A program made the translations under genes and the position numbers. This document shows, piece by piece, positions 18,913 through 48,474 of a stretch of 64,000 bases of DNA (positions are counted from its first letter, which is position 1; each line of letters starts with the position of its first letter). The stretch spans positions 1 through 64,000 of IMG/VR virus record IMGVR_UViG_3300046507_000773; one strand, written 5' to 3'. The notes below the pieces were generated by a model. The model was not told where the DNA came from. It was given only the letters and a program-made list of their open reading frames with translations, and did no database searches.

Positions 18913-20583
18913 GTGAACACCGCAACCCAACCTAATCAGTTCCCGCCCAAGCATCCCCAGTTTATTCTGGCCGCTGACAAGTCCTTCTTCGAAGACTTCC
19001 GTTTCGGTCAGAACAAGGACCAGCGCCTGGGCGAAGGCATTACCCGTGTCGAGGCGATCAGCTTCTACCAGGGCATTGCCGGCCACACCGTCCTGCGTCG
19101 CCGCTACGAACTGGACCTGGCCACCACCACCCTGCCGTACCGCCAATACCTGCCGTACGACGTGTTCGGCCGCATGAACCGCCAGTTCAAGCGCGAGTAC
19201 TTCGCCTATCGTCGCACCCCGCAAGCTGGCGAATCGGAACTGCATGGCAAAGTATCGGTCGGCATCGGCGGCCACATCGATGGTCATCGTACCTTCTTCA
19301 GTGAAGTCGGCGCCCTGGACCTGTTCAACACCGTCGCTGGCTCGGCTCTGGCTGAACGCGTGGAAGAACTGAAGGTCTACAAGAAGCAAGGACCGGAAAC
19401 CCTGGAACTGACCGGCGGCGAGAAAGCCCAGCAGCTGGCCATGTGGGCCAAGCCGAACCCGAACGTCAACATCCTGGTCGACAACGGCGACAACGTCGGC
19501 CAGCGCCACTTCGCCATCGTCAACTTCATCAACGTGCCGGAGGAATACGAACTGGACATCGCTGAAGAAGAACTGGAAGCCCTGGGCTTCTTGACTTACG
19601 ATGAACTGACGAGCAAGAACGCCGACGGCTCGGCCAAGTACAACCTCGAAGGCTGGACCAAGATCTGCCTGGAATACTTCGAGAAGGGTGCTTCCGGCAA
19701 GACCGGCGTGCAAGCCGACATGACCGACATCCAGCGCGGCCTGCAAGCCCAGCAACTGTCCTCAGCCACCAAGCAAGACCAGCAAGCGGCAATCGAAGCG
19801 CGTCGCGAACGTGCGGACAAGATCCGTACCGGCAGCTACGATGGTGAAGGCGAAGCCATCGGTCGCGACCAGATCGAGCAGCAAGCCCACGCAATGGGCG
19901 TCGATAGCCATACCGCCCTGACCGACAATCCGAACGTCGGCGAAGATGGTGTCGTGAAACCCTACGTGGATGTCCAGGACGCGGGCGTCGCTACCCGTAC
20001 CGTTCCGGCCAGCAACAACGTACCGGTCGGCGACAATCGCGCTGTGACAGCAGCGCAAGTCATCCAGGGCGACACGGGGGCAACCAAGCAGTTCGAAGAA
20101 GCCGTGAGCACGCCGATTCCGGCAACGGGTGAACTGGGTGCCAATCCGGAAAACCAGCCTGGCGGCGCCGGTTCGCTCACGCTGGAAGGTCACGGTGAAG
20201 AAGTCGATACCGGCCAAGGTCAATCGAACGAACCGCACGGCGGCTGGCTGAATCACCAGCAGGCAGGCCAAGTGGCGGACGCGCTGACGGCAAGCAACAC
20301 CGAAGACTTCAAGGATGGTGTCAACACCTTGCTGCCCTCGACCGGCGACCTGGTGCCCGATCCTGCCCATCAACCGGGTGGTTCGGGTTCCCTGACCCTG
20401 CACAACGAAGACGCTGACAAAGCAACTTCGAACATGCCGGGCCAGATCAACACCGAAGCAAACAAGTCCGACACGCCGCAGACTGGCCTGCCGGTGCAAG
20501 ACCCGCTGGTCGACAATGATCCGAACAAGGAACTGATCACCGATCCTTCGACGATCCCGACGAGCGACAAACCGGCCGAGTAA
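18913..20583 (+). CDS. NUDIX-like phosphoesterase (COG4112-like) with long acidic disordered tail
   Basis: YRQYLPY, YRR...GESELHGKVSVGIGGHID, NVGQRHFAIV. The C-terminal ~250 aa are low complexity. Confidence 0.75.
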   Translation: MNTATQPNQFPPKHPQFILAADKSFFEDFRFGQNKDQRLGEGITRVEAISFYQGIAGHTVLRRRYELDLATTTLPYRQYLPYDVFGRMNRQFKREYFAYRRTPQAGESELHGKVSVGIGGHIDGHRTFFSEVGALDLFNTVAGSALAERVEELKVYKKQGPETLELTGGEKAQQLAMWAKPNPNVNILVDNGDNVGQRHFAIVNFINVPEEYELDIAEEELEALGFLTYDELTSKNADGSAKYNLEGWTKICLEYFEKGASGKTGVQADMTDIQRGLQAQQLSSATKQDQQAAIEARRERADKIRTGSYDGEGEAIGRDQIEQQAHAMGVDSHTALTDNPNVGEDGVVKPYVDVQDAGVATRTVPASNNVPVGDNRAVTAAQVIQGDTGATKQFEEAVSTPIPATGELGANPENQPGGAGSLTLEGHGEEVDTGQGQSNEPHGGWLNHQQAGQVADALTASNTEDFKDGVNTLLPSTGDLVPDPAHQPGGSGSLTLHNEDADKATSNMPGQINTEANKSDTPQTGLPVQDPLVDNDPNKELITDPSTIPTSDKPAE

Positions 20584-20702: not shown

Positions 20703-21044
20703 ATGAATGCGCGTGTGATTTCGAACCGATGCAAGATCGCAACTAGCGGCTACCTATTAGAAGGCTTTCATGATGATCCAGACATCTTGGAAGGTGGTAC
20801 CGTGACTATCAGTAATCTGCTACATCTGGATGGCAGTCCTGTGACGATTGATTTGCCCCGATTCGAATTAGCACCCGAACAAAAGGAAGAAATCGGCCGT
20901 TGGTTTCTTCTCACGTTAAAGCGTTCTGATTTGAAAAATCCCTTCGAACATTATTTCAACGGATTCCGTGTTTCCACTACGGTCTTAACGACGCCGCGAG
21001 TTGTTGAGAAACCGTGGAGACTTTACGACGTAAGCATTAACTGA
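20703..21044 (+). CDS. Hypothetical protein
   Basis: 113 aa. Confidence 0.65.
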   Translation: MNARVISNRCKIATSGYLLEGFHDDPDILEGGTVTISNLLHLDGSPVTIDLPRFELAPEQKEEIGRWFLLTLKRSDLKNPFEHYFNGFRVSTTVLTTPRVVEKPWRLYDVSIN

Positions 21045-21056
21045 AAGGAAAGTGTC

Positions 21057-22400
21057 GTGAGTAATGACAATGTTTTGGGTACCAATAAAAAGCTGGAACT
21101 GTGGCGCAGTCGTTTGATCGATCTGCTGAAAGATGCAGCGGCCGATGACGTGTTTCTGTCGATGTCCACCGTCGCGGAAGGTCAACCCATCACCTATCCG
21201 TTTGACCGCGCCGCAGTTCAGGCGATGAGTGAAGACGGCCAGTGCAGCTACGAATCGATTTCCTTGCTCGATCAGGAACCGGTTGTCATCGACGAGGAAC
21301 GTGCAGTGGTTGCCAATGTTTTCGTGGTGGCCACGGAAATGCAGAAGTTCGAGAACAAAGAGCGCGTACCCCTGGACCGTGAAGAACTGCACGCCAAGCC
21401 GTCGATAAATGTGATGGTGTACTCGACCGGCACCGGTACTGGCGTCGCTTACGTGACCCACCAGATCGCCGAGTTCCTCTCGTACCGCGGCTGGGACGAA
21501 GTGTATCTGCACGCCACCCACACCATCGACGCCGTTCGCACCATGATGAAGAGCGGCAGTGGTCCGTACACCCATCCCCGCAAAGGCGATGATTCGGCAA
21601 CCTGGGACATCCCGATTACGGTCGCGATGGACGAAGGTGCCAAGAACGAGAACCGAGACCTGCACGAAGTCGTGGTGCGTGAAGCAGTACCGGAATGGCT
21701 CAATGACATCATGCCGGGCTCGCATGCTGATGCAGTCCAGCAGGTCAACGGCCGCTTCCAAACCGACGGACACTTCGGCAAGGAAGCGGTGATCTTCAAC
21801 ATGAATCCGGGCGAACCGTTCTTCATCGTCTTGGGTCGTGATCCGCAAGCGCCGTACCTGGTCGAGCAGTGGGCAACTGACCGCCAACAGATCGAACCGG
21901 AAGATCCGAAGATCCTCAATGCACTGAACATCGCTTCCATGATGCGTCAGTACAAAGACGATAATCCGACGATCGGCATGCCCAAGCTGAAGTTCGAGCA
22001 GTACCTGGAAAAAGAACTGATCATTATCCCGAACCGTGAAAAGCCGTACACGGAAGAAGAGATCCTGATCATGGTGCAAGAAGTTTTGCATCGTGCAGTT
22101 CTGTCGGGGGTGAACGTGCACATCCAGCACAACACGGCGATCATCCACCTGGCCGTCGAAAACGCAGTCGAGCAGCAACTGGCAAACGTCAGCAAGCTCT
22201 CGGCCGCAGCTGGCAAGGATGTGCTCATCATCATCTACGAAGAGGACATGCCGGTGAAAGCCTGGGGGAGCCATGACCTTCTGTATTCGCACTTCGGTAA
22301 GGACGTGGCCGACAAGATCACGTACTACCGTCCTGGTGAATACGAGGACATGCGGGCAGCGGATGAACTGATCGTACCGGATGCTCCGGCTACGCATTAA
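21057..22400 (+). CDS. Multidomain hypothetical protein with a degenerate P-loop-like module
   Basis: 447 aa. INVMVYSTGTGTGVAYVTHQIAEFLSYRGW resembles the 57-59 kb family. Also EPFFIVLGRDPQAPYLV. Confidence 0.8.
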   Translation: MSNDNVLGTNKKLELWRSRLIDLLKDAAADDVFLSMSTVAEGQPITYPFDRAAVQAMSEDGQCSYESISLLDQEPVVIDEERAVVANVFVVATEMQKFENKERVPLDREELHAKPSINVMVYSTGTGTGVAYVTHQIAEFLSYRGWDEVYLHATHTIDAVRTMMKSGSGPYTHPRKGDDSATWDIPITVAMDEGAKNENRDLHEVVVREAVPEWLNDIMPGSHADAVQQVNGRFQTDGHFGKEAVIFNMNPGEPFFIVLGRDPQAPYLVEQWATDRQQIEPEDPKILNALNIASMMRQYKDDNPTIGMPKLKFEQYLEKELIIIPNREKPYTEEEILIMVQEVLHRAVLSGVNVHIQHNTAIIHLAVENAVEQQLANVSKLSAAAGKDVLIIIYEEDMPVKAWGSHDLLYSHFGKDVADKITYYRPGEYEDMRAADELIVPDAPATH

Positions 22401-22491
22401 TTTTTCATCGTTGTACCTATTGTTATGTACGAGAATGTCGCTATCCTTCGTCGTTGGAGGTGGTTGCTATCTAGTGCTCCTAATCCAGACC

Positions 22492-22605
22492 TGATCCGTC
22501 TGAAGAGCCGTTAAAGTCGGCAGCGGTTTCCTTAAAGATATCGCTTGGGCTTGGACCCACGAAAGTTGGGGGAGGTACGCCATTACTTCCCCCTTCTAAC
22601 GGACA
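22492..22605 (+). ncRNA. Candidate type I hammerhead ribozyme with expanded stem II
   Basis: Stem I TCCGT/ACGGA; core CTGAAGA (22500-06); G22507-C22560; GAAA (22561-64); stem III with a 10-bp GGGGGAGGTA/TACTTCCCCC helix; CTA cleavage triplet at 22596-98. Confidence 0.7.
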
Positions 22606-22626
22606 TTTTTCTAAAGGAGAATCGAA

Positions 22627-22815
22627 GTGGCCGAAGATGCAAAGAAGGAAAAGAAACTGTTTGAAGGTCGACAGGCTGACACAGTTCAACGCGGCGTGTG
22701 TGCCAACCTGGCAAACATGCGTGCCAAAGATATCGTGATTGCACTCTCCATCGCACGGGAGCACAATCCAGAAGTACAAAAGGCGCTCGACGAAATTTCT
22801 GCAGTCAAGCGCTAA
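22627..22815 (+). CDS. 62-aa hypothetical protein between two structured RNA elements
   Basis: AAAGGAGA RBS, GTG start, normal composition. Confidence 0.75.
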   Translation: MAEDAKKEKKLFEGRQADTVQRGVCANLANMRAKDIVIALSIAREHNPEVQKALDEISAVKR

Positions 22816-22829
22816 CAGTCTTTGAAGTT

Positions 22830-23050
22830 GAGAGTTGAGCCGTACGGGTGCCCTTCCCCGCACTGGAGCCTCTTAATGGAAGAGAGTCTCACTCGTTTTC
22901 TCTAAGGTGCTGGCTTCCTTGCGGCGGTCGCTGGTAACTTGGCCTGAAAGGTCTCCTTTCCCTCCCCCAGGTCCTAGATGAGAAGACGAGTGCCCATGCT
23001 CACGGCCCAACCGTGAGAGAGACAGGGAGGTAACTTGGATAACTCCCACC
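22830..23050 (+). ncRNA. Candidate structured non-coding RNA
   Basis: 13-bp long-range helix 22890-902/22980-92, 7-bp hairpin 22999-23017, GGTAACTTGG twice, no RBS-led ORF, ends at a UUCG hairpin. Confidence 0.55.
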
Positions 23051-23062
23051 TATAACCAATGG

Positions 23063-23092
23063 GTCCCTCGGTCTTCGGATCGAGGGGTCTTT
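23063..23092 (+). terminator. Terminator-like hairpin
   Basis: CCCTCGGTC-TTCG-GATCGAGGG followed by TCTTTATGCCG. Confidence 0.75.
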
Positions 23093-23221
23093 ATGCCGAA
23101 TTTTTTTGTTTGCAGCATAAAAACCCCCACCAGACGGTGGGGGAATATGCCGTACATTTACAAGATGCGTTTTATACCAGGCATCCATATCACTTGGATG
23201 TGGCAAAGGAAAGAACAGCAG

Positions 23222-23707
23222 ATGACTAACACAAAAAACTATCCACCTATGGTGGTGCTCGAACTTGAGCGTACGTTCCCGTGGTTGCTGGACATTGCGG
23301 CAGACTTAGAAGGTCAGTGCACCGTTGATGAGTTGCTCAATCATCTCTTTGAATTTCTGCGAGATGAGATCAACATTACGGATGCTACCAAAATGCTCAG
23401 ACTGGGATATCGTTTCCCAGAGCACGGCGAGAACGAGGAAGAGCAAAAGAAAAAGGATGAAGAGCAGATCAAAACGTTTGTCAACGTACTGCGTGAAATC
23501 AAAGATGCGCTTGTCAGAGCACAAGTCATCACGGCGTTCGAGACGACGCCTTATCGTTTCCACCGAGCTTTTGGTAATGGCTCCATAGTGCTTGTGCGTG
23601 CTGACCTAGCACCACTCAAGGGGAAGCTTATGGAAACGCCACCACGGCCCGTAGAAAGGGTGTGGGAGACTACATTTGGTCGAGATATGGAGTATCGGAT
23701 TGCTTAG
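23222..23707 (+). CDS. Hypothetical protein, dispersed member of the 42.6-43.8 kb paralog family
   Basis: VVLEL...PYRFHRAFGNGSIVLVR. CCATATCACT motif ~30 nt upstream. Confidence 0.75.
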   Translation: MTNTKNYPPMVVLELERTFPWLLDIAADLEGQCTVDELLNHLFEFLRDEINITDATKMLRLGYRFPEHGENEEEQKKKDEEQIKTFVNVLREIKDALVRAQVITAFETTPYRFHRAFGNGSIVLVRADLAPLKGKLMETPPRPVERVWETTFGRDMEYRIA

Positions 23708-46296: not shown

Positions 46297-48474
46297 ATGA
46301 ATCCGTTCCAAAACAAAACCAAGAAGCCGGCACTGCCGGATTCGCAAACCGCGGTCATGCTGCGCTCCACCCTGAGCCAGCTGAACAAGAACAGCTCGCT
46401 GCTGAGCTCGCAAGTTGCCCGCGGCGCCTTCGCCCTGGAAGGTCTGGACGACGAAACCGTCCTGGCCATGGACAACGCAGCTGAAGGCCTGAACGTCGCC
46501 CTGGAACAGATCTTCCAGGAAGCCGGCTTCAAAGCAACCCCGCAGCAGAAGCAGTCGGCAATGATCGCCGGCATGATGGGCGGCGACGTGGGCGCCTACC
46601 TGGGCCACGCTGTTTCCCTGGAAGGTTTCCAGGCCAAGAACACCGACGTCGTGATCGTCGGCGCCGCTGACGCAATCGCCTCGCGTCCGGCAATGGAAGC
46701 GTACGACGAGAAGGAACTGAAGAACTCGATCGCCTACTCGGTCGCGTACAACATGAACTCGCCGCGTCAAGACGCGTTCGGCGAAGCCTTCTTCCCGACC
46801 GTCGTCGTGAACCCGGACCAGGTCGGCTACCAGATCTCGATCCGCCTGACCTACGTCTACCCGGAAGTCCGCCGCAACATCGACGGCTCCGTCAACGACT
46901 TCAAGAAGCGCAACATCATCCAGGCAATCGTCGACCCGTCGATCCTGAAGACCGAGCAGCTGAAGGTCGTGCCGGTGTTCCGTAACGAATCGAAGGCCAA
47001 CTTCGTCGACGAAACCCTGCTGCCGCCGAAGAACATCACCTTCGAAGGCGAGACCATCACCACCAGCGCCCTGCGCTTCGACAACAAGTTCTCGCTGCTG
47101 GGCATCTCCCAGACCCCGGCCCTGCTGGAAACCGGCGTCATGGACAGCACCGACGCGCTGGACGCGGCGATCACGCTGAGCAACGTCTACATGTCGGTCG
47201 CCGGCAAAGTGGGCGGCGTCGACAAGACCGAGGTGTTCAAGTTCATGACGGCCAACATGCCGCTGTCGAACTTCATCTCGATGCAGCAAGACGACTACCG
47301 CATGATGCAAGTCACCTTCATGACCGAAGGCCTGCTGATGACCGGTAACACCAAGACCGTCGCTGGCGCCGCTTCGGGCGTGCTGGCCGACATCGCTGCA
47401 CAGAAGGTCTCGGTCCGTCTGGAACTGACCGTGAACGGCACCGTGAACGTCGAACTGGGTACCACCAACCTGATGGCATCGAAAGTGCGCGTCAAGTCGG
47501 TCACCGACGAAGACGGCAACCTGCTGTCGCTGACCTCGCCGGGCGTCGGCAAGGACATCGCGGACCTGTTCGCAACGGCTGAAGCCATCGGCTACGACCT
47601 GCAAGCGCAGCGTACCAACAGCAACCGTCGTCAGCGCGGCACCCTGCTGGGCCAGACGATCCAGAACCAGGTGTACAACGTGCCCCTGCGCTCGCCGATC
47701 ACCATCCCGCGTCCGCAAACCGTTGGCGATGCCAACGACGCCTCGGACCTGGCTGCACTGATCTCGACGACCCGCATCCGCATCTCGAACGCGGCCGTCG
47801 ACAAGCTGCTGGAAACCGCTGACCAGCTGAAAGAGCTGGTTGCCCAGAACGACCTGCTGGAAAACAACCTGCCGATCCTGGGTATCGCCCGTCACCTGGT
47901 GACCGCCTTCTACGACGAGTTCACCGTCGACGTGCAAGCGTCGATGAACAACCTGACCTCGTCCGAGAAGTACGACGACATCAGCGCCACGCTGATCAAC
48001 CAACTGCGCGACCTCGTGTATCGCATGCTGGTGAAATCGGCCTACCAGGCTGCTGCTGACGCGCTGGCTGGCGGCATCGCTCCGATGCCTGACGTCATCA
48101 TCGGTACCGATCCGAAGACCGCTCGCTACCTGATGGTTTCGGGCGACCTGCGCACCCTCGGCACCGAAGTGAACATCAAGCTGGTCACCACGCTGAACCT
48201 GCAGATGCGCGACACCATCATCGTCGCCTTCGGCCAGCCGAACGCCGGCGACGGTACGCCGAACCCGCTGCACTACGGCAACATGGTCTGGAAACCGGAA
48301 ATGACCCTGATCATGCCGACCCAGCGTAACGGCTCGAACTCGAAAGAGATCACCGTCACCCCGTCGTTCAACCACATCGTGAACGTGCCGATCATGGCCC
48401 GTATCTACGTGAAGGGCATCAGCGACGCGGTGGGCAGCAAAAGCACTGTTGCCTTCGAACAGGTCGGTCCGTAA
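46297..48474 (+). CDS. Major capsid protein (phiKZ gp120-like)
   Basis: 725 aa, extreme codon bias, N-terminal A/S-x-E maturation-type sites (ALE, SLE, AME), QDAFGEAFFPT, synteny. Confidence 0.92.
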   Translation: MNPFQNKTKKPALPDSQTAVMLRSTLSQLNKNSSLLSSQVARGAFALEGLDDETVLAMDNAAEGLNVALEQIFQEAGFKATPQQKQSAMIAGMMGGDVGAYLGHAVSLEGFQAKNTDVVIVGAADAIASRPAMEAYDEKELKNSIAYSVAYNMNSPRQDAFGEAFFPTVVVNPDQVGYQISIRLTYVYPEVRRNIDGSVNDFKKRNIIQAIVDPSILKTEQLKVVPVFRNESKANFVDETLLPPKNITFEGETITTSALRFDNKFSLLGISQTPALLETGVMDSTDALDAAITLSNVYMSVAGKVGGVDKTEVFKFMTANMPLSNFISMQQDDYRMMQVTFMTEGLLMTGNTKTVAGAASGVLADIAAQKVSVRLELTVNGTVNVELGTTNLMASKVRVKSVTDEDGNLLSLTSPGVGKDIADLFATAEAIGYDLQAQRTNSNRRQRGTLLGQTIQNQVYNVPLRSPITIPRPQTVGDANDASDLAALISTTRIRISNAAVDKLLETADQLKELVAQNDLLENNLPILGIARHLVTAFYDEFTVDVQASMNNLTSSEKYDDISATLINQLRDLVYRMLVKSAYQAAADALAGGIAPMPDVIIGTDPKTARYLMVSGDLRTLGTEVNIKLVTTLNLQMRDTIIVAFGQPNAGDGTPNPLHYGNMVWKPEMTLIMPTQRNGSNSKEITVTPSFNHIVNVPIMARIYVKGISDAVGSKSTVAFEQVGP

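What the first reader, a model, noticed from the sequence alone, without database searches (positions are those of the whole stretch)
22830..23050. Multi-helix 3' RNA with a duplicated GGUAACUUGG motif
Seen: CACTCGTTTTCTC(22890-902) pairs with GAGAAGACGAGTG(22980-92) over 13 bp with one G-U, extended by TCTAAGG/CCTAGA and CTGG/CCAG. Other hairpins are CTCTT/AAGAG, GGCC-TGAAA-GGTC and CTCACGG-CCCAA-CCGTGAG. A possible closing helix is GAGTTG/TAACTC. GGTAACTTGG occurs at 22933 and 23029, and AGTTGAG twice near 22826-39. I do not recognise a known RNA family.
Basis: seen in the sequence. Interest (0 to 1): 0.7.

Follow-up and report, generated by a model that had tools for sequence, protein, structure and literature searches.

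The report
New structured RNA of jumbo phages
This stretch is the best-conserved part of a large, elaborately folded RNA found so far only in a small group of uncultured giant phages; it matches no described RNA family and its function is still unknown.

Summary
The main helices are real: I found homologous copies at nine other loci in metagenome assemblies. On a 10-sequence alignment, 93% of cells in 55 predicted pairs form standard pairs (38-47% when partners are slid), and 32 pairs change on both sides. G-U counts and the terminator place the RNA on the + strand.

Three proposals fail comparison: CTCTT/AAGAG, GGCC-TGAAA-GGTC and CTGG/CCAG. Only the second GGTAACTTGG is conserved, inside a hairpin loop; the first is not.

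The finding is the invariant 3' domain (~22827-23095) of a larger modular RNA.
- In eight relatives it ends a gene-free stretch of about 0.85-1.0 kb (seven full-length, one cut by a contig end). On the seven full-length copies, 56 of 93 predicted central-domain pairs covary.
- In this window and its nearest relative the central domain is replaced by a real 62-aa ORF (22627-22815).
- Upstream lies a hammerhead-like junction (22495-22603), present in six copies.

There is no Rfam 15 match and no copy in IMG/VR, JGI metagenomes, GTDB genomes, or the two nearest cultured phages tested (FLC9, RP31). The host phage is phiKZ-like.

This is a new RNA family. Its function is inferred only: probably a stable, processed trans-acting scaffold RNA.

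The parts
22416..22430 (+). Conserved 5' motif CCTATTGTTATGTAC, containing TATG (22424-22427). It is a candidate phage promoter and transcription start, or else the 5' end of the RNA.
   Evidence: The core TRTTATGTA is present in all 9 copies whose 5' end is held. The motif is unique in the 226.8-kb genome. In phiKZ, late promoters are TATG with +1 at the G (PMC4666361). Promoter function here is inferred.
22431..22494 (+). 5' leader with local hairpins.
   Evidence: RNAfold of 22424-22612 gives z = -3.1. The leader is 93% identical to L018, against 73-87% for the three flanking CDSs compared.
22495..22603 (+). Hammerhead-like multi-helix junction. Its parts are helix I 22495-22499/22599-22603, CUGAAGA 22500-22506, hairpin A 22507-22521, hairpin B 22522-22545, hairpin C 22546-22559, GAAA 22561-22564, and helix III 22564-22597. 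The predicted cut by hammerhead rules is after A22598.
   Evidence: The layout is the same in all 6 copies that carry the module. On alignment A11, 90.5% of cells pair (32-48% when slid), and 13 of 23 pairs change on both sides. The module is absent from L020, L026 and L031. Cleavage is untested.
22614..22815 (+). Shine-Dalgarno AAGGAG (22614-22619) and a 62-aa ORF (GTG 22627 to TAA 22815). This replaces the ~0.5-kb central RNA domain of the long-form relatives.
   Evidence: Against L018 there are 16 synonymous and 7 replacement codon differences, and differences by codon position are 5/4/20. No Pfam or PHROG family matches. The long forms have no conserved ORF.
22827..22877 (+). P1: helix 22827-22834/22870-22877, enclosing the invariant internal loop UUGAG/AGC and a hairpin (22840-22866).
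   Evidence: Helix 1: 15 pairs, 7 with changes on both sides, 98% of cells paired.
22886..23023 (+). Three-way junction closed by GUCU 22886-22889 / AGAC 23020-23023. It holds the long helix P3 (22890-22902/22980-22992, plus CUAAGG/CCUAG), hairpin P4 with the invariant loop UUGCGGC (22909-22935), hairpin P5 (22941-22946/22968-22973) with the invariant UCCUUUC (22954-22960), and hairpin P6 (22999-23017, CCCAA loop).
   Evidence: Helices 2, 3, 4 and 6: 4, 8, 8 and 6 pairs, with 1, 5, 7 and 5 changing on both sides. For P5, in the 8 long-form copies a stem of about 7-13 bp with unrelated sequence carries UCCUUUC in its apical loop; in the window and L018 the outer arms are present but the minimum-energy fold pairs the motif into a small inner stem. 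Model R1 scores 149.7 bits on 22884-23051 and finds a single copy in the genome.
23025..23047 (+). P7 hairpin GGGAG / CTCCC with the 13-nt loop GUAACUUGGAUAA.
   Evidence: Helix 7: 100% paired, 2 of 5 pairs change on both sides. The loop is GUAAYKUGGAUAA in all 10 copies.
23061..23097 (+). 3' stem-loop (CCCTCGGTC-TTCG-GATCGAGGG, 23065-23086) followed by CUUUAUGCC. It is an intrinsic-terminator-like 3' end.
   Evidence: One search lists it as terminator-like. A hairpin of different sequence followed by UUUAUG(C/A)C stands at the same place in all 10 copies (helix 8 has 4 of 6 pairs changing on both sides).

Best explanation
The region is the invariant 3' domain of a previously undescribed, modular, highly structured RNA. 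The RNA is encoded on the + strand of a small clade of uncultured phiKZ-like jumbo phages.

Shown:
- The domain is about 270 nt. It folds into helix P1 (with an invariant internal loop) followed by a three-way junction closed by P2 that carries P3 (itself branching into hairpins P4 and P5) and P6, then hairpin P7, and ends in a terminator-like hairpin.
- Its helices covary. Four loop motifs are invariant: UUGCGGC, UCCUUUC, CCCAA and GUAAYKUGGAUAA.
- In most relatives the domain closes a gene-free, covarying stretch of 0.85-1.0 kb.
- In this window the central domain has been swapped for a real 62-aa ORF, and a hammerhead-like junction lies upstream.

Inferred:
- The locus is transcribed as its own unit from the conserved TATG-containing 5' motif to the terminator.
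- In copies that carry the hammerhead-like module, the transcript is cut after the conserved N-U-H triplet (after 22598 here). That would release a 5'-OH RNA whose constant part is the 3' domain.
- The 3' domain acts as a stable scaffold, and its invariant loops are docking sites for a conserved partner.

My most specific guess is that the loop-displayed, anti-Shine-Dalgarno-like UCCUUUC pairs with purine-rich ribosome-binding sites or engages the translation machinery. In this window it would then act as a functional 3' module of the small mRNA.

My probabilities: new conserved structured RNA on the + strand, about 0.95. Independent, processed, trans-acting RNA, about 0.5. Translation or SD-directed action, about 0.2. 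The confidence given for this explanation (0.7) is for the statement as a whole, weighted towards the shown part.
For: - Near relatives. In sequencing runs, relatives keep 22876-23047 free of the differences listed for run X5, while the adjacent ORF differs by about 17%. Against L018 the RNA parts are 90-93% identical and the three flanking CDSs compared are 73-87%.
- Homologs. Nine further loci were found through flanking proteins that are only 35-55% identical.
- Covariation in the 3' domain. Of 55 pairs, 93% of cells pair against 38-47% when slid. 32 pairs change on both sides against 6-12. The covariation score is 0.53 against 0.07-0.15, and 0 of 500 shuffles reach the observed values.
- Strand. 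There are 62 G-U cells on the + strand. Read on the - strand, the same pairs give 89 non-pairs. The terminator orientation agrees.
- Long forms. They have no conserved ORF. The central domain has 93 predicted pairs, 87% of cells paired against 31-44% when slid, and 56 pairs change on both sides.
- The 62-aa ORF is under purifying selection.
- Hammerhead-like module.
- The element is single-copy in the genome.
- UCCUUUC sits in the apical loop of a stem of unrelated sequence in 8 of 10 copies.
Against: - There is no expression data. All runs that hold the sequence look like DNA, so the transcript ends, the promoter and the cleavage are unverified.
- Only 10 copies exist, in perhaps 4-5 lineages. 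The alignments and structures were derived from the same sequences, which inflates the slid-partner controls.
- The invariant loops give no covariation, so no partner can be deduced.
- In the window's own minimum-energy fold, UCCUUUC is sequestered in a small stem.
- The hammerhead-like core has 47-127 nt, with two extra hairpins, between stem II and the GAAA strand. I found no such insertion described in the two hammerhead surveys I consulted (PMC3088659, PMC10085705).
- In the long forms the terminator sits about 20 nt upstream of the next gene's start codon, which also fits a leader role.
Confidence: 0.7

Rival explanations
1. It is a cis-acting leader or attenuator. The whole structured RNA would be a giant 5' untranslated region that controls read-through of its own terminator into the downstream + strand gene cluster, by riboswitch-like or processive-antitermination-like action.
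For: In the long-form copies for which I printed the 3' flank (L019, L020, L026, L028, L030, L031), the terminator hairpin and UUUAUGCC are followed within about 20 nt by AAGGA and the ATG of a ~190-aa gene. All neighbouring genes run on the + strand.
Against: - In the window and L018 the next gene is about 130 nt away, behind a second hairpin, and is a different gene of 161 aa.
- The terminator stems differ freely in sequence. By eye I saw no conserved alternative (antiterminator) pairing with the 3' domain.
- About 1 kb is far larger than the leaders I know of (my own knowledge).
- The domain persists when it follows an ORF.
Confidence: 0.12
2. It is a 3' UTR element of the 62-aa gene that only stabilises or terminates that mRNA. 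It would have no function of its own.
For: In the window it starts a few bases after the ORF's stop codon and ends in a terminator. The ORF is a real gene.
Against: Eight of ten copies have no ORF upstream, yet they keep the domain with invariant loops. A nuclease barrier would not need four invariant loop sequences across phages whose neighbouring proteins are 35-55% identical.
Confidence: 0.08
3. It is a self-splicing intron or another mobile ribozyme element that carries an ORF.
For: It is a large structured RNA whose middle is variable or occupied by an ORF, and it carries a ribozyme-like junction.
Against: - No group I or group II intron model matches, even at E = 10.
- The flanking genes are complete, with their own stops and starts, and differ between lineages.
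- The element is single-copy and always at the same syntenic place.
- A 62-aa ORF with no family match is not a recognisable homing endonuclease or reverse transcriptase.
Confidence: 0.03
4. It is a chance fold in an intergenic spacer, or a - strand feature.
For: The single-sequence z-score is only -2.1. ORFs can be drawn on the - strand at 22480-22863 and 22873-23049.
Against: Covariation and the strand test exclude it. The - strand fold has z = +0.4. No - strand ORF is conserved.
Confidence: 0.01

Closest known systems
GOLLD and ROOL RNAs (large ornate RNAs of phages and prophages, function unknown)
   Same: Both are phage-borne, 0.6-1 kb, extensively base-paired and gene-free, with no known protein partner. 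[quoted passage not shown]
   Different: - No sequence or structure match to either Rfam model.
- No neighbouring tRNA genes.
- Found in phiKZ-like jumbo phages from soil, not in the phages and prophages where GOLLD and ROOL are reported.
- The central domain can be swapped for a protein-coding ORF.
- It carries a hammerhead-like module.
- Oligomerisation is untested.
Type I (CGS) hammerhead ribozymes in phage intergenic regions
   Same: The upstream module has CUGANGA (only N7 varies), GAAA, an invariant A15.1-U16.1 pair, a U-H triplet (H = A or C) exactly before helix I, and covarying helices I and III. Hammerheads are known between phage genes, and they tolerate very short stem II and unusual connectivity (PMC3088659, PMC10085705).
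   Different: - 47-127 nt forming two extra hairpins lie between stem II and G12, making a five-way junction.
- No Rfam hammerhead model matches.
- Three of the nine copies whose 5' end is held lack the module.
- Activity is unknown.
Pyrimidine-rich (anti-SD-like) loop sRNAs that mask ribosome-binding sites, such as the C-rich loops of RsaE/RoxS-type sRNAs (my own knowledge)
   Same: An invariant UCCUUUC is displayed in an apical loop. It is complementary to the AAGGA-type Shine-Dalgarno sequences enriched upstream of this phage's genes.
   Different: The motif is embedded in a 270-nt to 1-kb scaffold, not a ~100-nt sRNA. No target has been identified. In the window, the loop can self-pair.
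Intrinsic terminators and structured 3' ends
   Same: The domain ends in a GC-rich hairpin followed by a U-rich tract.
   Different: The terminator is only the last ~35 nt. The conserved 230 nt upstream of it are not explained by termination.

Membership tests
Hammerhead ribozyme (5' module, 22495-22603) | Core strand C3-U4-G5-A6-N7-G8-A9 | tested here: met
   CUGA[A/U]GA is present in 6 of 6 copies, and only N7 varies.
Hammerhead ribozyme (5' module, 22495-22603) | G12-A13-A14 strand, an A15.1-U16.1 pair, and H17 not G immediately 5' of helix I | tested here: met
   GAAA is present in 6 of 6 copies. The 15.1-16.1 pair is A-U in all 6. The triplets are CUA, AUC and CUC.
Hammerhead ribozyme (5' module, 22495-22603) | Helices I, II and III placed correctly around the core and supported by covariation | tested here: met
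   Pairs changing on both sides: helix I, 4 of 5; helix III, 6 of 10; hairpin A, 1 of 4.
Hammerhead ribozyme (5' module, 22495-22603) | Stem II directly joins A9 to G12, forming a three-way junction | tested here: not met
   47-127 nt containing two further hairpins (B and C) lie between hairpin A and G12.
Hammerhead ribozyme (5' module, 22495-22603) | Match to curated covariance models | tested here: not met
   No hammerhead family was reported at E up to 10.
Hammerhead ribozyme (5' module, 22495-22603) | Site-specific self-cleavage giving 2',3'-cyclic phosphate and 5'-OH ends | not testable with these tools
   This needs in vitro transcription and cleavage mapping.
GOLLD / ROOL large ornate RNAs | Match to the family covariance model | tested here: not met
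   There were no matches at gathering score in the window or in L018-L020. There were none at E up to 10 on L019:7600-8800 and L022:3200-4300.
GOLLD / ROOL large ornate RNAs | Frequent adjacency to tRNA genes | tested here: not met
   ARAGORN finds no tRNA in the 64-kb window.
GOLLD / ROOL large ornate RNAs | Homo-oligomeric RNA-only assembly | not testable with these tools
   This needs native gels, SEC-MALS or cryo-EM.
Group I / group II introns | Match to intron models, and interruption of a host gene | tested here: not met
   No Rfam hit. The flanking ORFs are complete and differ between lineages.
Riboswitch / transcription-attenuation leader | Terminator immediately upstream of the regulated gene, plus a conserved mutually exclusive antiterminator pairing | tested here: inconclusive
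   The terminator-SD-ATG layout is met in the long forms whose 3' flank I printed, but not in the window or L018. Inspection of A7 showed no conserved alternative pairing. There was no systematic search.
Intrinsic terminator (3' end only) | GC-rich stem-loop followed by a U-rich tract on the transcribed strand | tested here: met
   One search lists 23072-23086. A hairpin plus UUUAUG is present in all 10 copies, with compensatory changes (helix 8).

The most novel reading that the evidence does not exclude
This is a new class of large ornate phage RNA, about 1 kb, with at least 164 predicted base pairs on the seven full-length copies. It would be made by phiKZ-like (possibly nucleus-forming) jumbo phages and matured by a non-canonical hammerhead whose core tolerates two extra hairpins between stem II and the GAAA strand. 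Its invariant 3' domain would be a trans-acting module that engages the translation apparatus or ribosome-binding sites. The central domain would be an exchangeable cassette, either RNA or a small ORF.
Probability: 0.3. Interest if true: 0.85.

Novelty: new variant of a known kind. Interest (0 to 1): 0.72.

Why it matters
Large, intricately folded non-coding RNAs are rare. Each new class (OLE, GOLLD, ROOL, raiA) has opened new RNA biology, most recently RNA-only cages.

This one has unusually clean comparative support for so few copies. It sits in jumbo phages that use their own transcription machinery. It also shows two features I have not seen described together:
- a central domain that can be exchanged for a protein-coding gene while the 5' and 3' RNA modules stay;
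- an upstream junction that keeps every hammerhead core rule except the direct stem II to G12 connection.

If the junction cleaves, it widens the known architecture of hammerheads. If the 3' domain binds a host or phage factor, it is a new handle on how jumbo phages control infected cells.

It also shows that the public Logan and ENA assemblies hold RNA families that IMG/VR, the JGI metagenomes and Rfam do not hold.

Tried and rejected
**Searches that found no relatives**
- Duplicated-motif pattern GGTAACTTGG-N(80-100)-GGTAACTTGG in IMG/VR. The 16 hits are all coding tandem repeats unrelated to this RNA.
- Exact and degenerate loop patterns in IMG/VR, JGI metagenomes and GTDB genomes: no hits.
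- Pattern GGAGCC..GAGTC..CTTGCGGCG in IMG/VR: two chance hits inside a coding region.
- Hammerhead-module pattern in IMG/VR and GTDB genomes: no hits.
- Protein-guided locus searches in IMG/VR and JGI metagenomes: nothing.
- blastn of 22400-23250 and tblastn of the upstream protein against cultured phages: nothing.
- Model R1 on the whole genomes of Burkholderia phage FLC9 and Ralstonia phage RP31: no match.

**Ideas dropped**
- CCTATTGTTATGTAC as a general promoter. It is unique in the genome. TATG-containing 5-mers are about 2-4-fold enriched upstream of ORFs, but so are AT-rich words in general.
- Annotating the neighbours. Pfam and PHROGs give nothing for the genes flanking the RNA. The protein atlas gives no usable lead for the conserved C-terminal domain of the upstream protein.
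- A long-range AAGGAG / UCCUUUC pairing conserved in all copies. By my reading of the printed sequences, the purine motif sits in GNRA-tetraloop hairpins in four long-form copies, so I dropped it.
- K-turn and group II domain V readings of UUGAGCC...GGAGCC. I checked these by hand and they do not fit.

**Technical limits**
- A MAFFT alignment of P5 alone put the arms out of register, so P5 rests on per-sequence folds.
- No RNA-seq run holds the locus.

Full report
**1. Observation**

The quoted strings are all at the stated coordinates.
- The 13-bp helix is 22890-22902 / 22980-22992.
- The CCCAA hairpin is 22999-23017.
- GGTAACTTGG is at 22933 and 23029.
- AGTTGAG is at 22826 and 22833.

As a single sequence, 22816-23100 folds only moderately better than shuffles on the + strand (z = -2.1). 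It folds no better than shuffles on the - strand (z = +0.4). Rfam 15 reports nothing at gathering score in the whole window, and nothing relevant at E up to 10 in 22300-23300.

**2. Context**

The window is the first 64 kb of a 226.8-kb IMG/VR virus record from a rhizosphere metagenome. The phage is phiKZ-like:
- major head protein phrog_3231 at 46297-48474;
- virion protein phrog_3004;
- DnaB phrog_3213;
- nearest cultured capsids: Burkholderia phage FLC9 at 49.8% and Ralstonia phages RP12/RP31 at 41%.

The finding lies in a + strand gene run. It sits between a 62-aa ORF (22627-22815) and a 161-aa ORF (23222-23707). Neither these nor their neighbours match Pfam or PHROGs, apart from phrog_8902 on the 556-aa protein. 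A terminator-like hairpin with a U-rich tail (23065-23095) closes the region. A second hairpin (23124-23143) looks like a - strand terminator.

**3. Close relatives**

Contigs from other runs carry relatives of this phage.
- In run X5 the 62-aa ORF differs at 41 of 239 positions. The contig covering 22825-23574 shows none of its listed differences between 22876 and 23047.
- In X3 and X4 the ORF interior (22667-22804) is replaced by diverged sequence of the same length, while the RNA flanks stay nearly identical.
- Against L018, nucleotide identity is 93% for the 5' non-coding part and 90.5% for the 3' domain. It is 84%, 87% and 73% for the three CDSs compared.

**4. Homolog collection**

Pattern and protein-guided scans of IMG/VR, JGI metagenomes and GTDB genomes found nothing related. 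Relatives came only from the large protein collections, through flanking proteins:
- the 447-aa upstream protein gave L018, L019 and L020;
- a profile of the 401-aa downstream protein gave L021 and L022;
- the 633-aa upstream protein of L022 gave L026, L028, L030 and L031.

Together with the window this makes ten copies. L021 is cut by a contig end.

In the long-form loci the layout is a ~600-aa gene, usually followed by a ~110-aa gene, then 0.85-1.0 kb without genes, then a ~150-190-aa gene. No conserved ORF exists in that gap.

**5. Structure of the 3' domain**

The evidence is a 10-sequence alignment (A7), in which identity to the window is 49-58% outside L018. RNAalifold predicts 55 pairs, and 32 of them have compensatory changes. 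The independent count gives:

| Measure | Observed | Partners slid by 1-3 columns |
|---|---|---|
| Cells forming a standard pair | 93% | 38-47% |
| Pairs changing on both sides | 32 | 6-12 |
| Covariation score | 0.53 | 0.07-0.15 |

None of 500 shuffles reached the observed values for any of the five measures.

The same pairs hold 62 G-U cells on the + strand. Read on the - strand they would give 89 non-pairs. So the RNA is on the + strand, which agrees with the terminator.

In window coordinates the fold is:
- **P1**: 22827-22834 / 22870-22877, around the invariant loop UUGAG/AGC and a hairpin.
- **P2**: GUCU 22886-22889 / AGAC 23020-23023, closing a three-way junction.
- **P3**:
- **P4**: 22909-22935, with invariant loop UUGCGGC.
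- **P5**: 22941-22946 / 22968-22973.
- **P6**: 22999-23017, with loop CCCAA.
- **P7**: 23025-23047, with loop GUAACUUGGAUAA.
- The terminator follows.

P5 rests on per-sequence folds. In the eight long-form copies a stem of about 7-13 bp with unrelated sequence caps a loop holding the invariant UCCUUUC. In the window and L018 the outer arms are present but the minimum-energy fold pairs the motif into a small inner stem.

**6.

Supported: the long helix, its extension, the CCCAA hairpin, and the hairpin around the second motif copy.

Not supported: CTCTT/AAGAG (CTCTT belongs to P1), GGCC-TGAAA-GGTC, and CTGG/CCAG (these bases belong to P4 and P5).

The proposed closing helix GAGTTG/TAACTC holds for at least 6 bp in only about 4 of 10 copies, by my reading of the aligned sequences (A7). 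Its 4-nt invariant core (GUUG/UAAC) could still be a tertiary contact, but covariation cannot test it.

The first GGTAACTTGG is not conserved even in L018.

**7. The larger element**

The window's upstream spacer (22401-22626) is homologous to the 5' end of the long forms. The element has four parts ahead of the 3' domain.

*(a) A 5' motif.* CCTATTGTTATGTAC (22416-22430) has its core conserved in every copy whose 5' end is held. It is unique in the genome. It contains TATG. In phiKZ, TATG is the late promoter of the non-virion RNA polymerase, with +1 at the G (PMC4666361). That makes G22427 a candidate start. This is inference.

*(b) A multi-helix junction* (22495-22603). It is present in six copies and absent from L020, L026 and L031. 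Its order is:
1. helix I;
2. CUGA[A/U]GA;
3. hairpin A, with loop UUAAAGU;
4. variable hairpin B;
5. hairpin C, with loop YUUGGA;
6. C-GAAA;
7. helix III, starting with an invariant A-U pair;
8. N-U-(A/C);
9. helix I.

On alignment A11, 90.5% of cells pair (32-48% when slid), and 13 of 23 pairs change on both sides.

This meets every hammerhead core rule except one. Between stem II and G12 there are 47-127 nt, with two extra hairpins. No Rfam hammerhead model matches. Hammerheads do occur between phage genes, with stem II as short as 1-2 bp, and permuted connectivities are active (PMC3088659, PMC10085705). Activity is therefore plausible but unproven. I put it at about 0.4. The predicted cut is after A22598, 28 nt upstream of the ORF's start codon.

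*(c) A central part.* In the long forms it is a domain of about 0.5 kb. On the 7-sequence alignment it has 93 predicted pairs. Of these, 87% of cells pair (31-44% when slid), and 56 pairs change on both sides (14-18 when slid). Because the structure was derived from the same alignment, the contrast is somewhat inflated.

In the window and L018 this domain is absent. In its place is the 62-aa ORF with a good Shine-Dalgarno sequence. Against L018 the ORF shows 16 synonymous and 7 replacement codon differences, with 20 of 29 differences at third positions. It is a real gene.

*(d) The 3' domain and terminator.* These are present in all ten copies.

A covariance model of the 3' domain (R1) finds one copy in the own genome (149.7 bits). 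It finds none in FLC9 or RP31.

**8. Comparison with known families**

No family in Rfam 15 matches the window, L018-L020, L019:7600-8800 or L022:3200-4300. My two literature searches aimed at jumbo-phage non-coding RNAs returned no description of such an RNA.

The nearest kind is the large ornate phage RNAs, GOLLD and ROOL. These are phage-borne, 0.6-0.8 kb or more, and of unknown function. GOLLD likewise has a conserved 3' region and a variable 5' region (PMC12286853). However, there is no model match, no tRNA neighbourhood, a different phage group, and an ORF-swappable centre.

Intron membership fails. There is no model match, and the flanking genes are complete and vary between lineages.

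A leader or attenuator role fits the long-form layout, where the terminator is followed directly by SD and ATG. It does not fit the window or L018, and I saw no conserved antiterminator pairing.

**9. Most likely mechanism**

Shown: this is a conserved, + strand, covarying multi-domain RNA. Its constant part is the finding.

Inferred:
- It is its own transcription unit, running from the TATG motif to the terminator.
- It is optionally processed by the hammerhead-like module.
- The 3' domain is a stable scaffold. Its four invariant loops contact a partner conserved across these phages or their hosts.

The only loop with an obvious reading is UCCUUUC. It is complementary to the AAGGA-type ribosome-binding sites that are enriched upstream of this phage's genes. 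It is also complementary to the window ORF's own SD region (AAAGGAGA / UCUCCUUU, read). Hence my most specific but weak proposal (about 0.2) is action on translation initiation.

Rivals, with my probabilities:
- leader or attenuator, 0.12;
- mere 3' UTR stabiliser, 0.08;
- intron or mobile ribozyme, 0.03;
- chance fold or - strand feature, 0.01.

**10. Verdict**

The finding is real and more interesting than described. It is the invariant 3' domain of a new, rare, modular, ornate RNA of uncultured phiKZ-like phages. The duplicated motif and three minor helices do not hold. Function and processing remain to be tested. The decisive experiments are transcript-end mapping, an in vitro cleavage assay at 22598, chemical probing, an oligomerisation test, and partner pull-downs.

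Noticed in passing
window 22495-22603: A hammerhead-like five-way junction. It keeps CUGANGA, GAAA, the A15.1-U16.1 pair and the U-H cleavage triplet, but has two extra hairpins between stem II and G12. It is present in 6 of the 9 copies whose 5' end is held.
   Followed up: yes
window 22627-22815: A 62-aa ORF with a strong SD and clear purifying selection sits where relatives have about 0.5 kb of structured RNA. In runs X3 and X4 its interior (22667-22804) is replaced by diverged sequence of the same length, while the RNA flanks stay nearly identical. This looks like a hypervariable or recombining cassette.
   Followed up: partly
window 23116-23150: A second GC-rich hairpin (CCCCCACC-AGAC-GGTGGGGG) has a T-run on the - strand. 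It is a terminator-like site facing the opposite way, between the RNA and the next + strand gene. No convincing - strand gene lies to its right.
   Followed up: no
window 23091-23097 and the 3' ends of L019-L031: The conserved UUUAUGCC after the terminator contains TATG. In the long forms whose 3' flank I printed it lies about 15-20 nt upstream of the next gene's start codon, with AAGGA in between. It may double as that gene's phiKZ-type promoter.
   Followed up: partly
window 21057-22400; L022:1334-3235 and relatives: The protein encoded upstream of the RNA (447-893 aa) has a variable N-terminal part and a conserved ~200-aa C-terminal domain (motif GEPFFxLLGRDPQ). It has no Pfam, PHROG or cultured-phage match. 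It is linked to the RNA in the nine copies whose upstream flank is held (L021 is cut at its 5' end).
   Followed up: partly
window 20985-22397 (-) and 22480-22863 (-): Long ORFs on the - strand overlap the + strand genes and the RNA. They look like shadow ORFs of this 54% GC genome, not genes.
   Followed up: partly
window 18913-20583: A 556-aa protein whose N-terminal ~250 aa match phrog_8902 and are 48% identical to the L019 homolog. It is the best-conserved protein of the neighbourhood, and its function is unknown.
   Followed up: no
L021:1035-1319, L026:9256-9540, L028:9421-9705, L030:4708-4992 (- strand): A 94-aa BubE-family (PF20137) gene lies on the opposite strand about 1 kb downstream of the RNA in several long-form loci. 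I did not look for a counterpart in the window.
   Followed up: no
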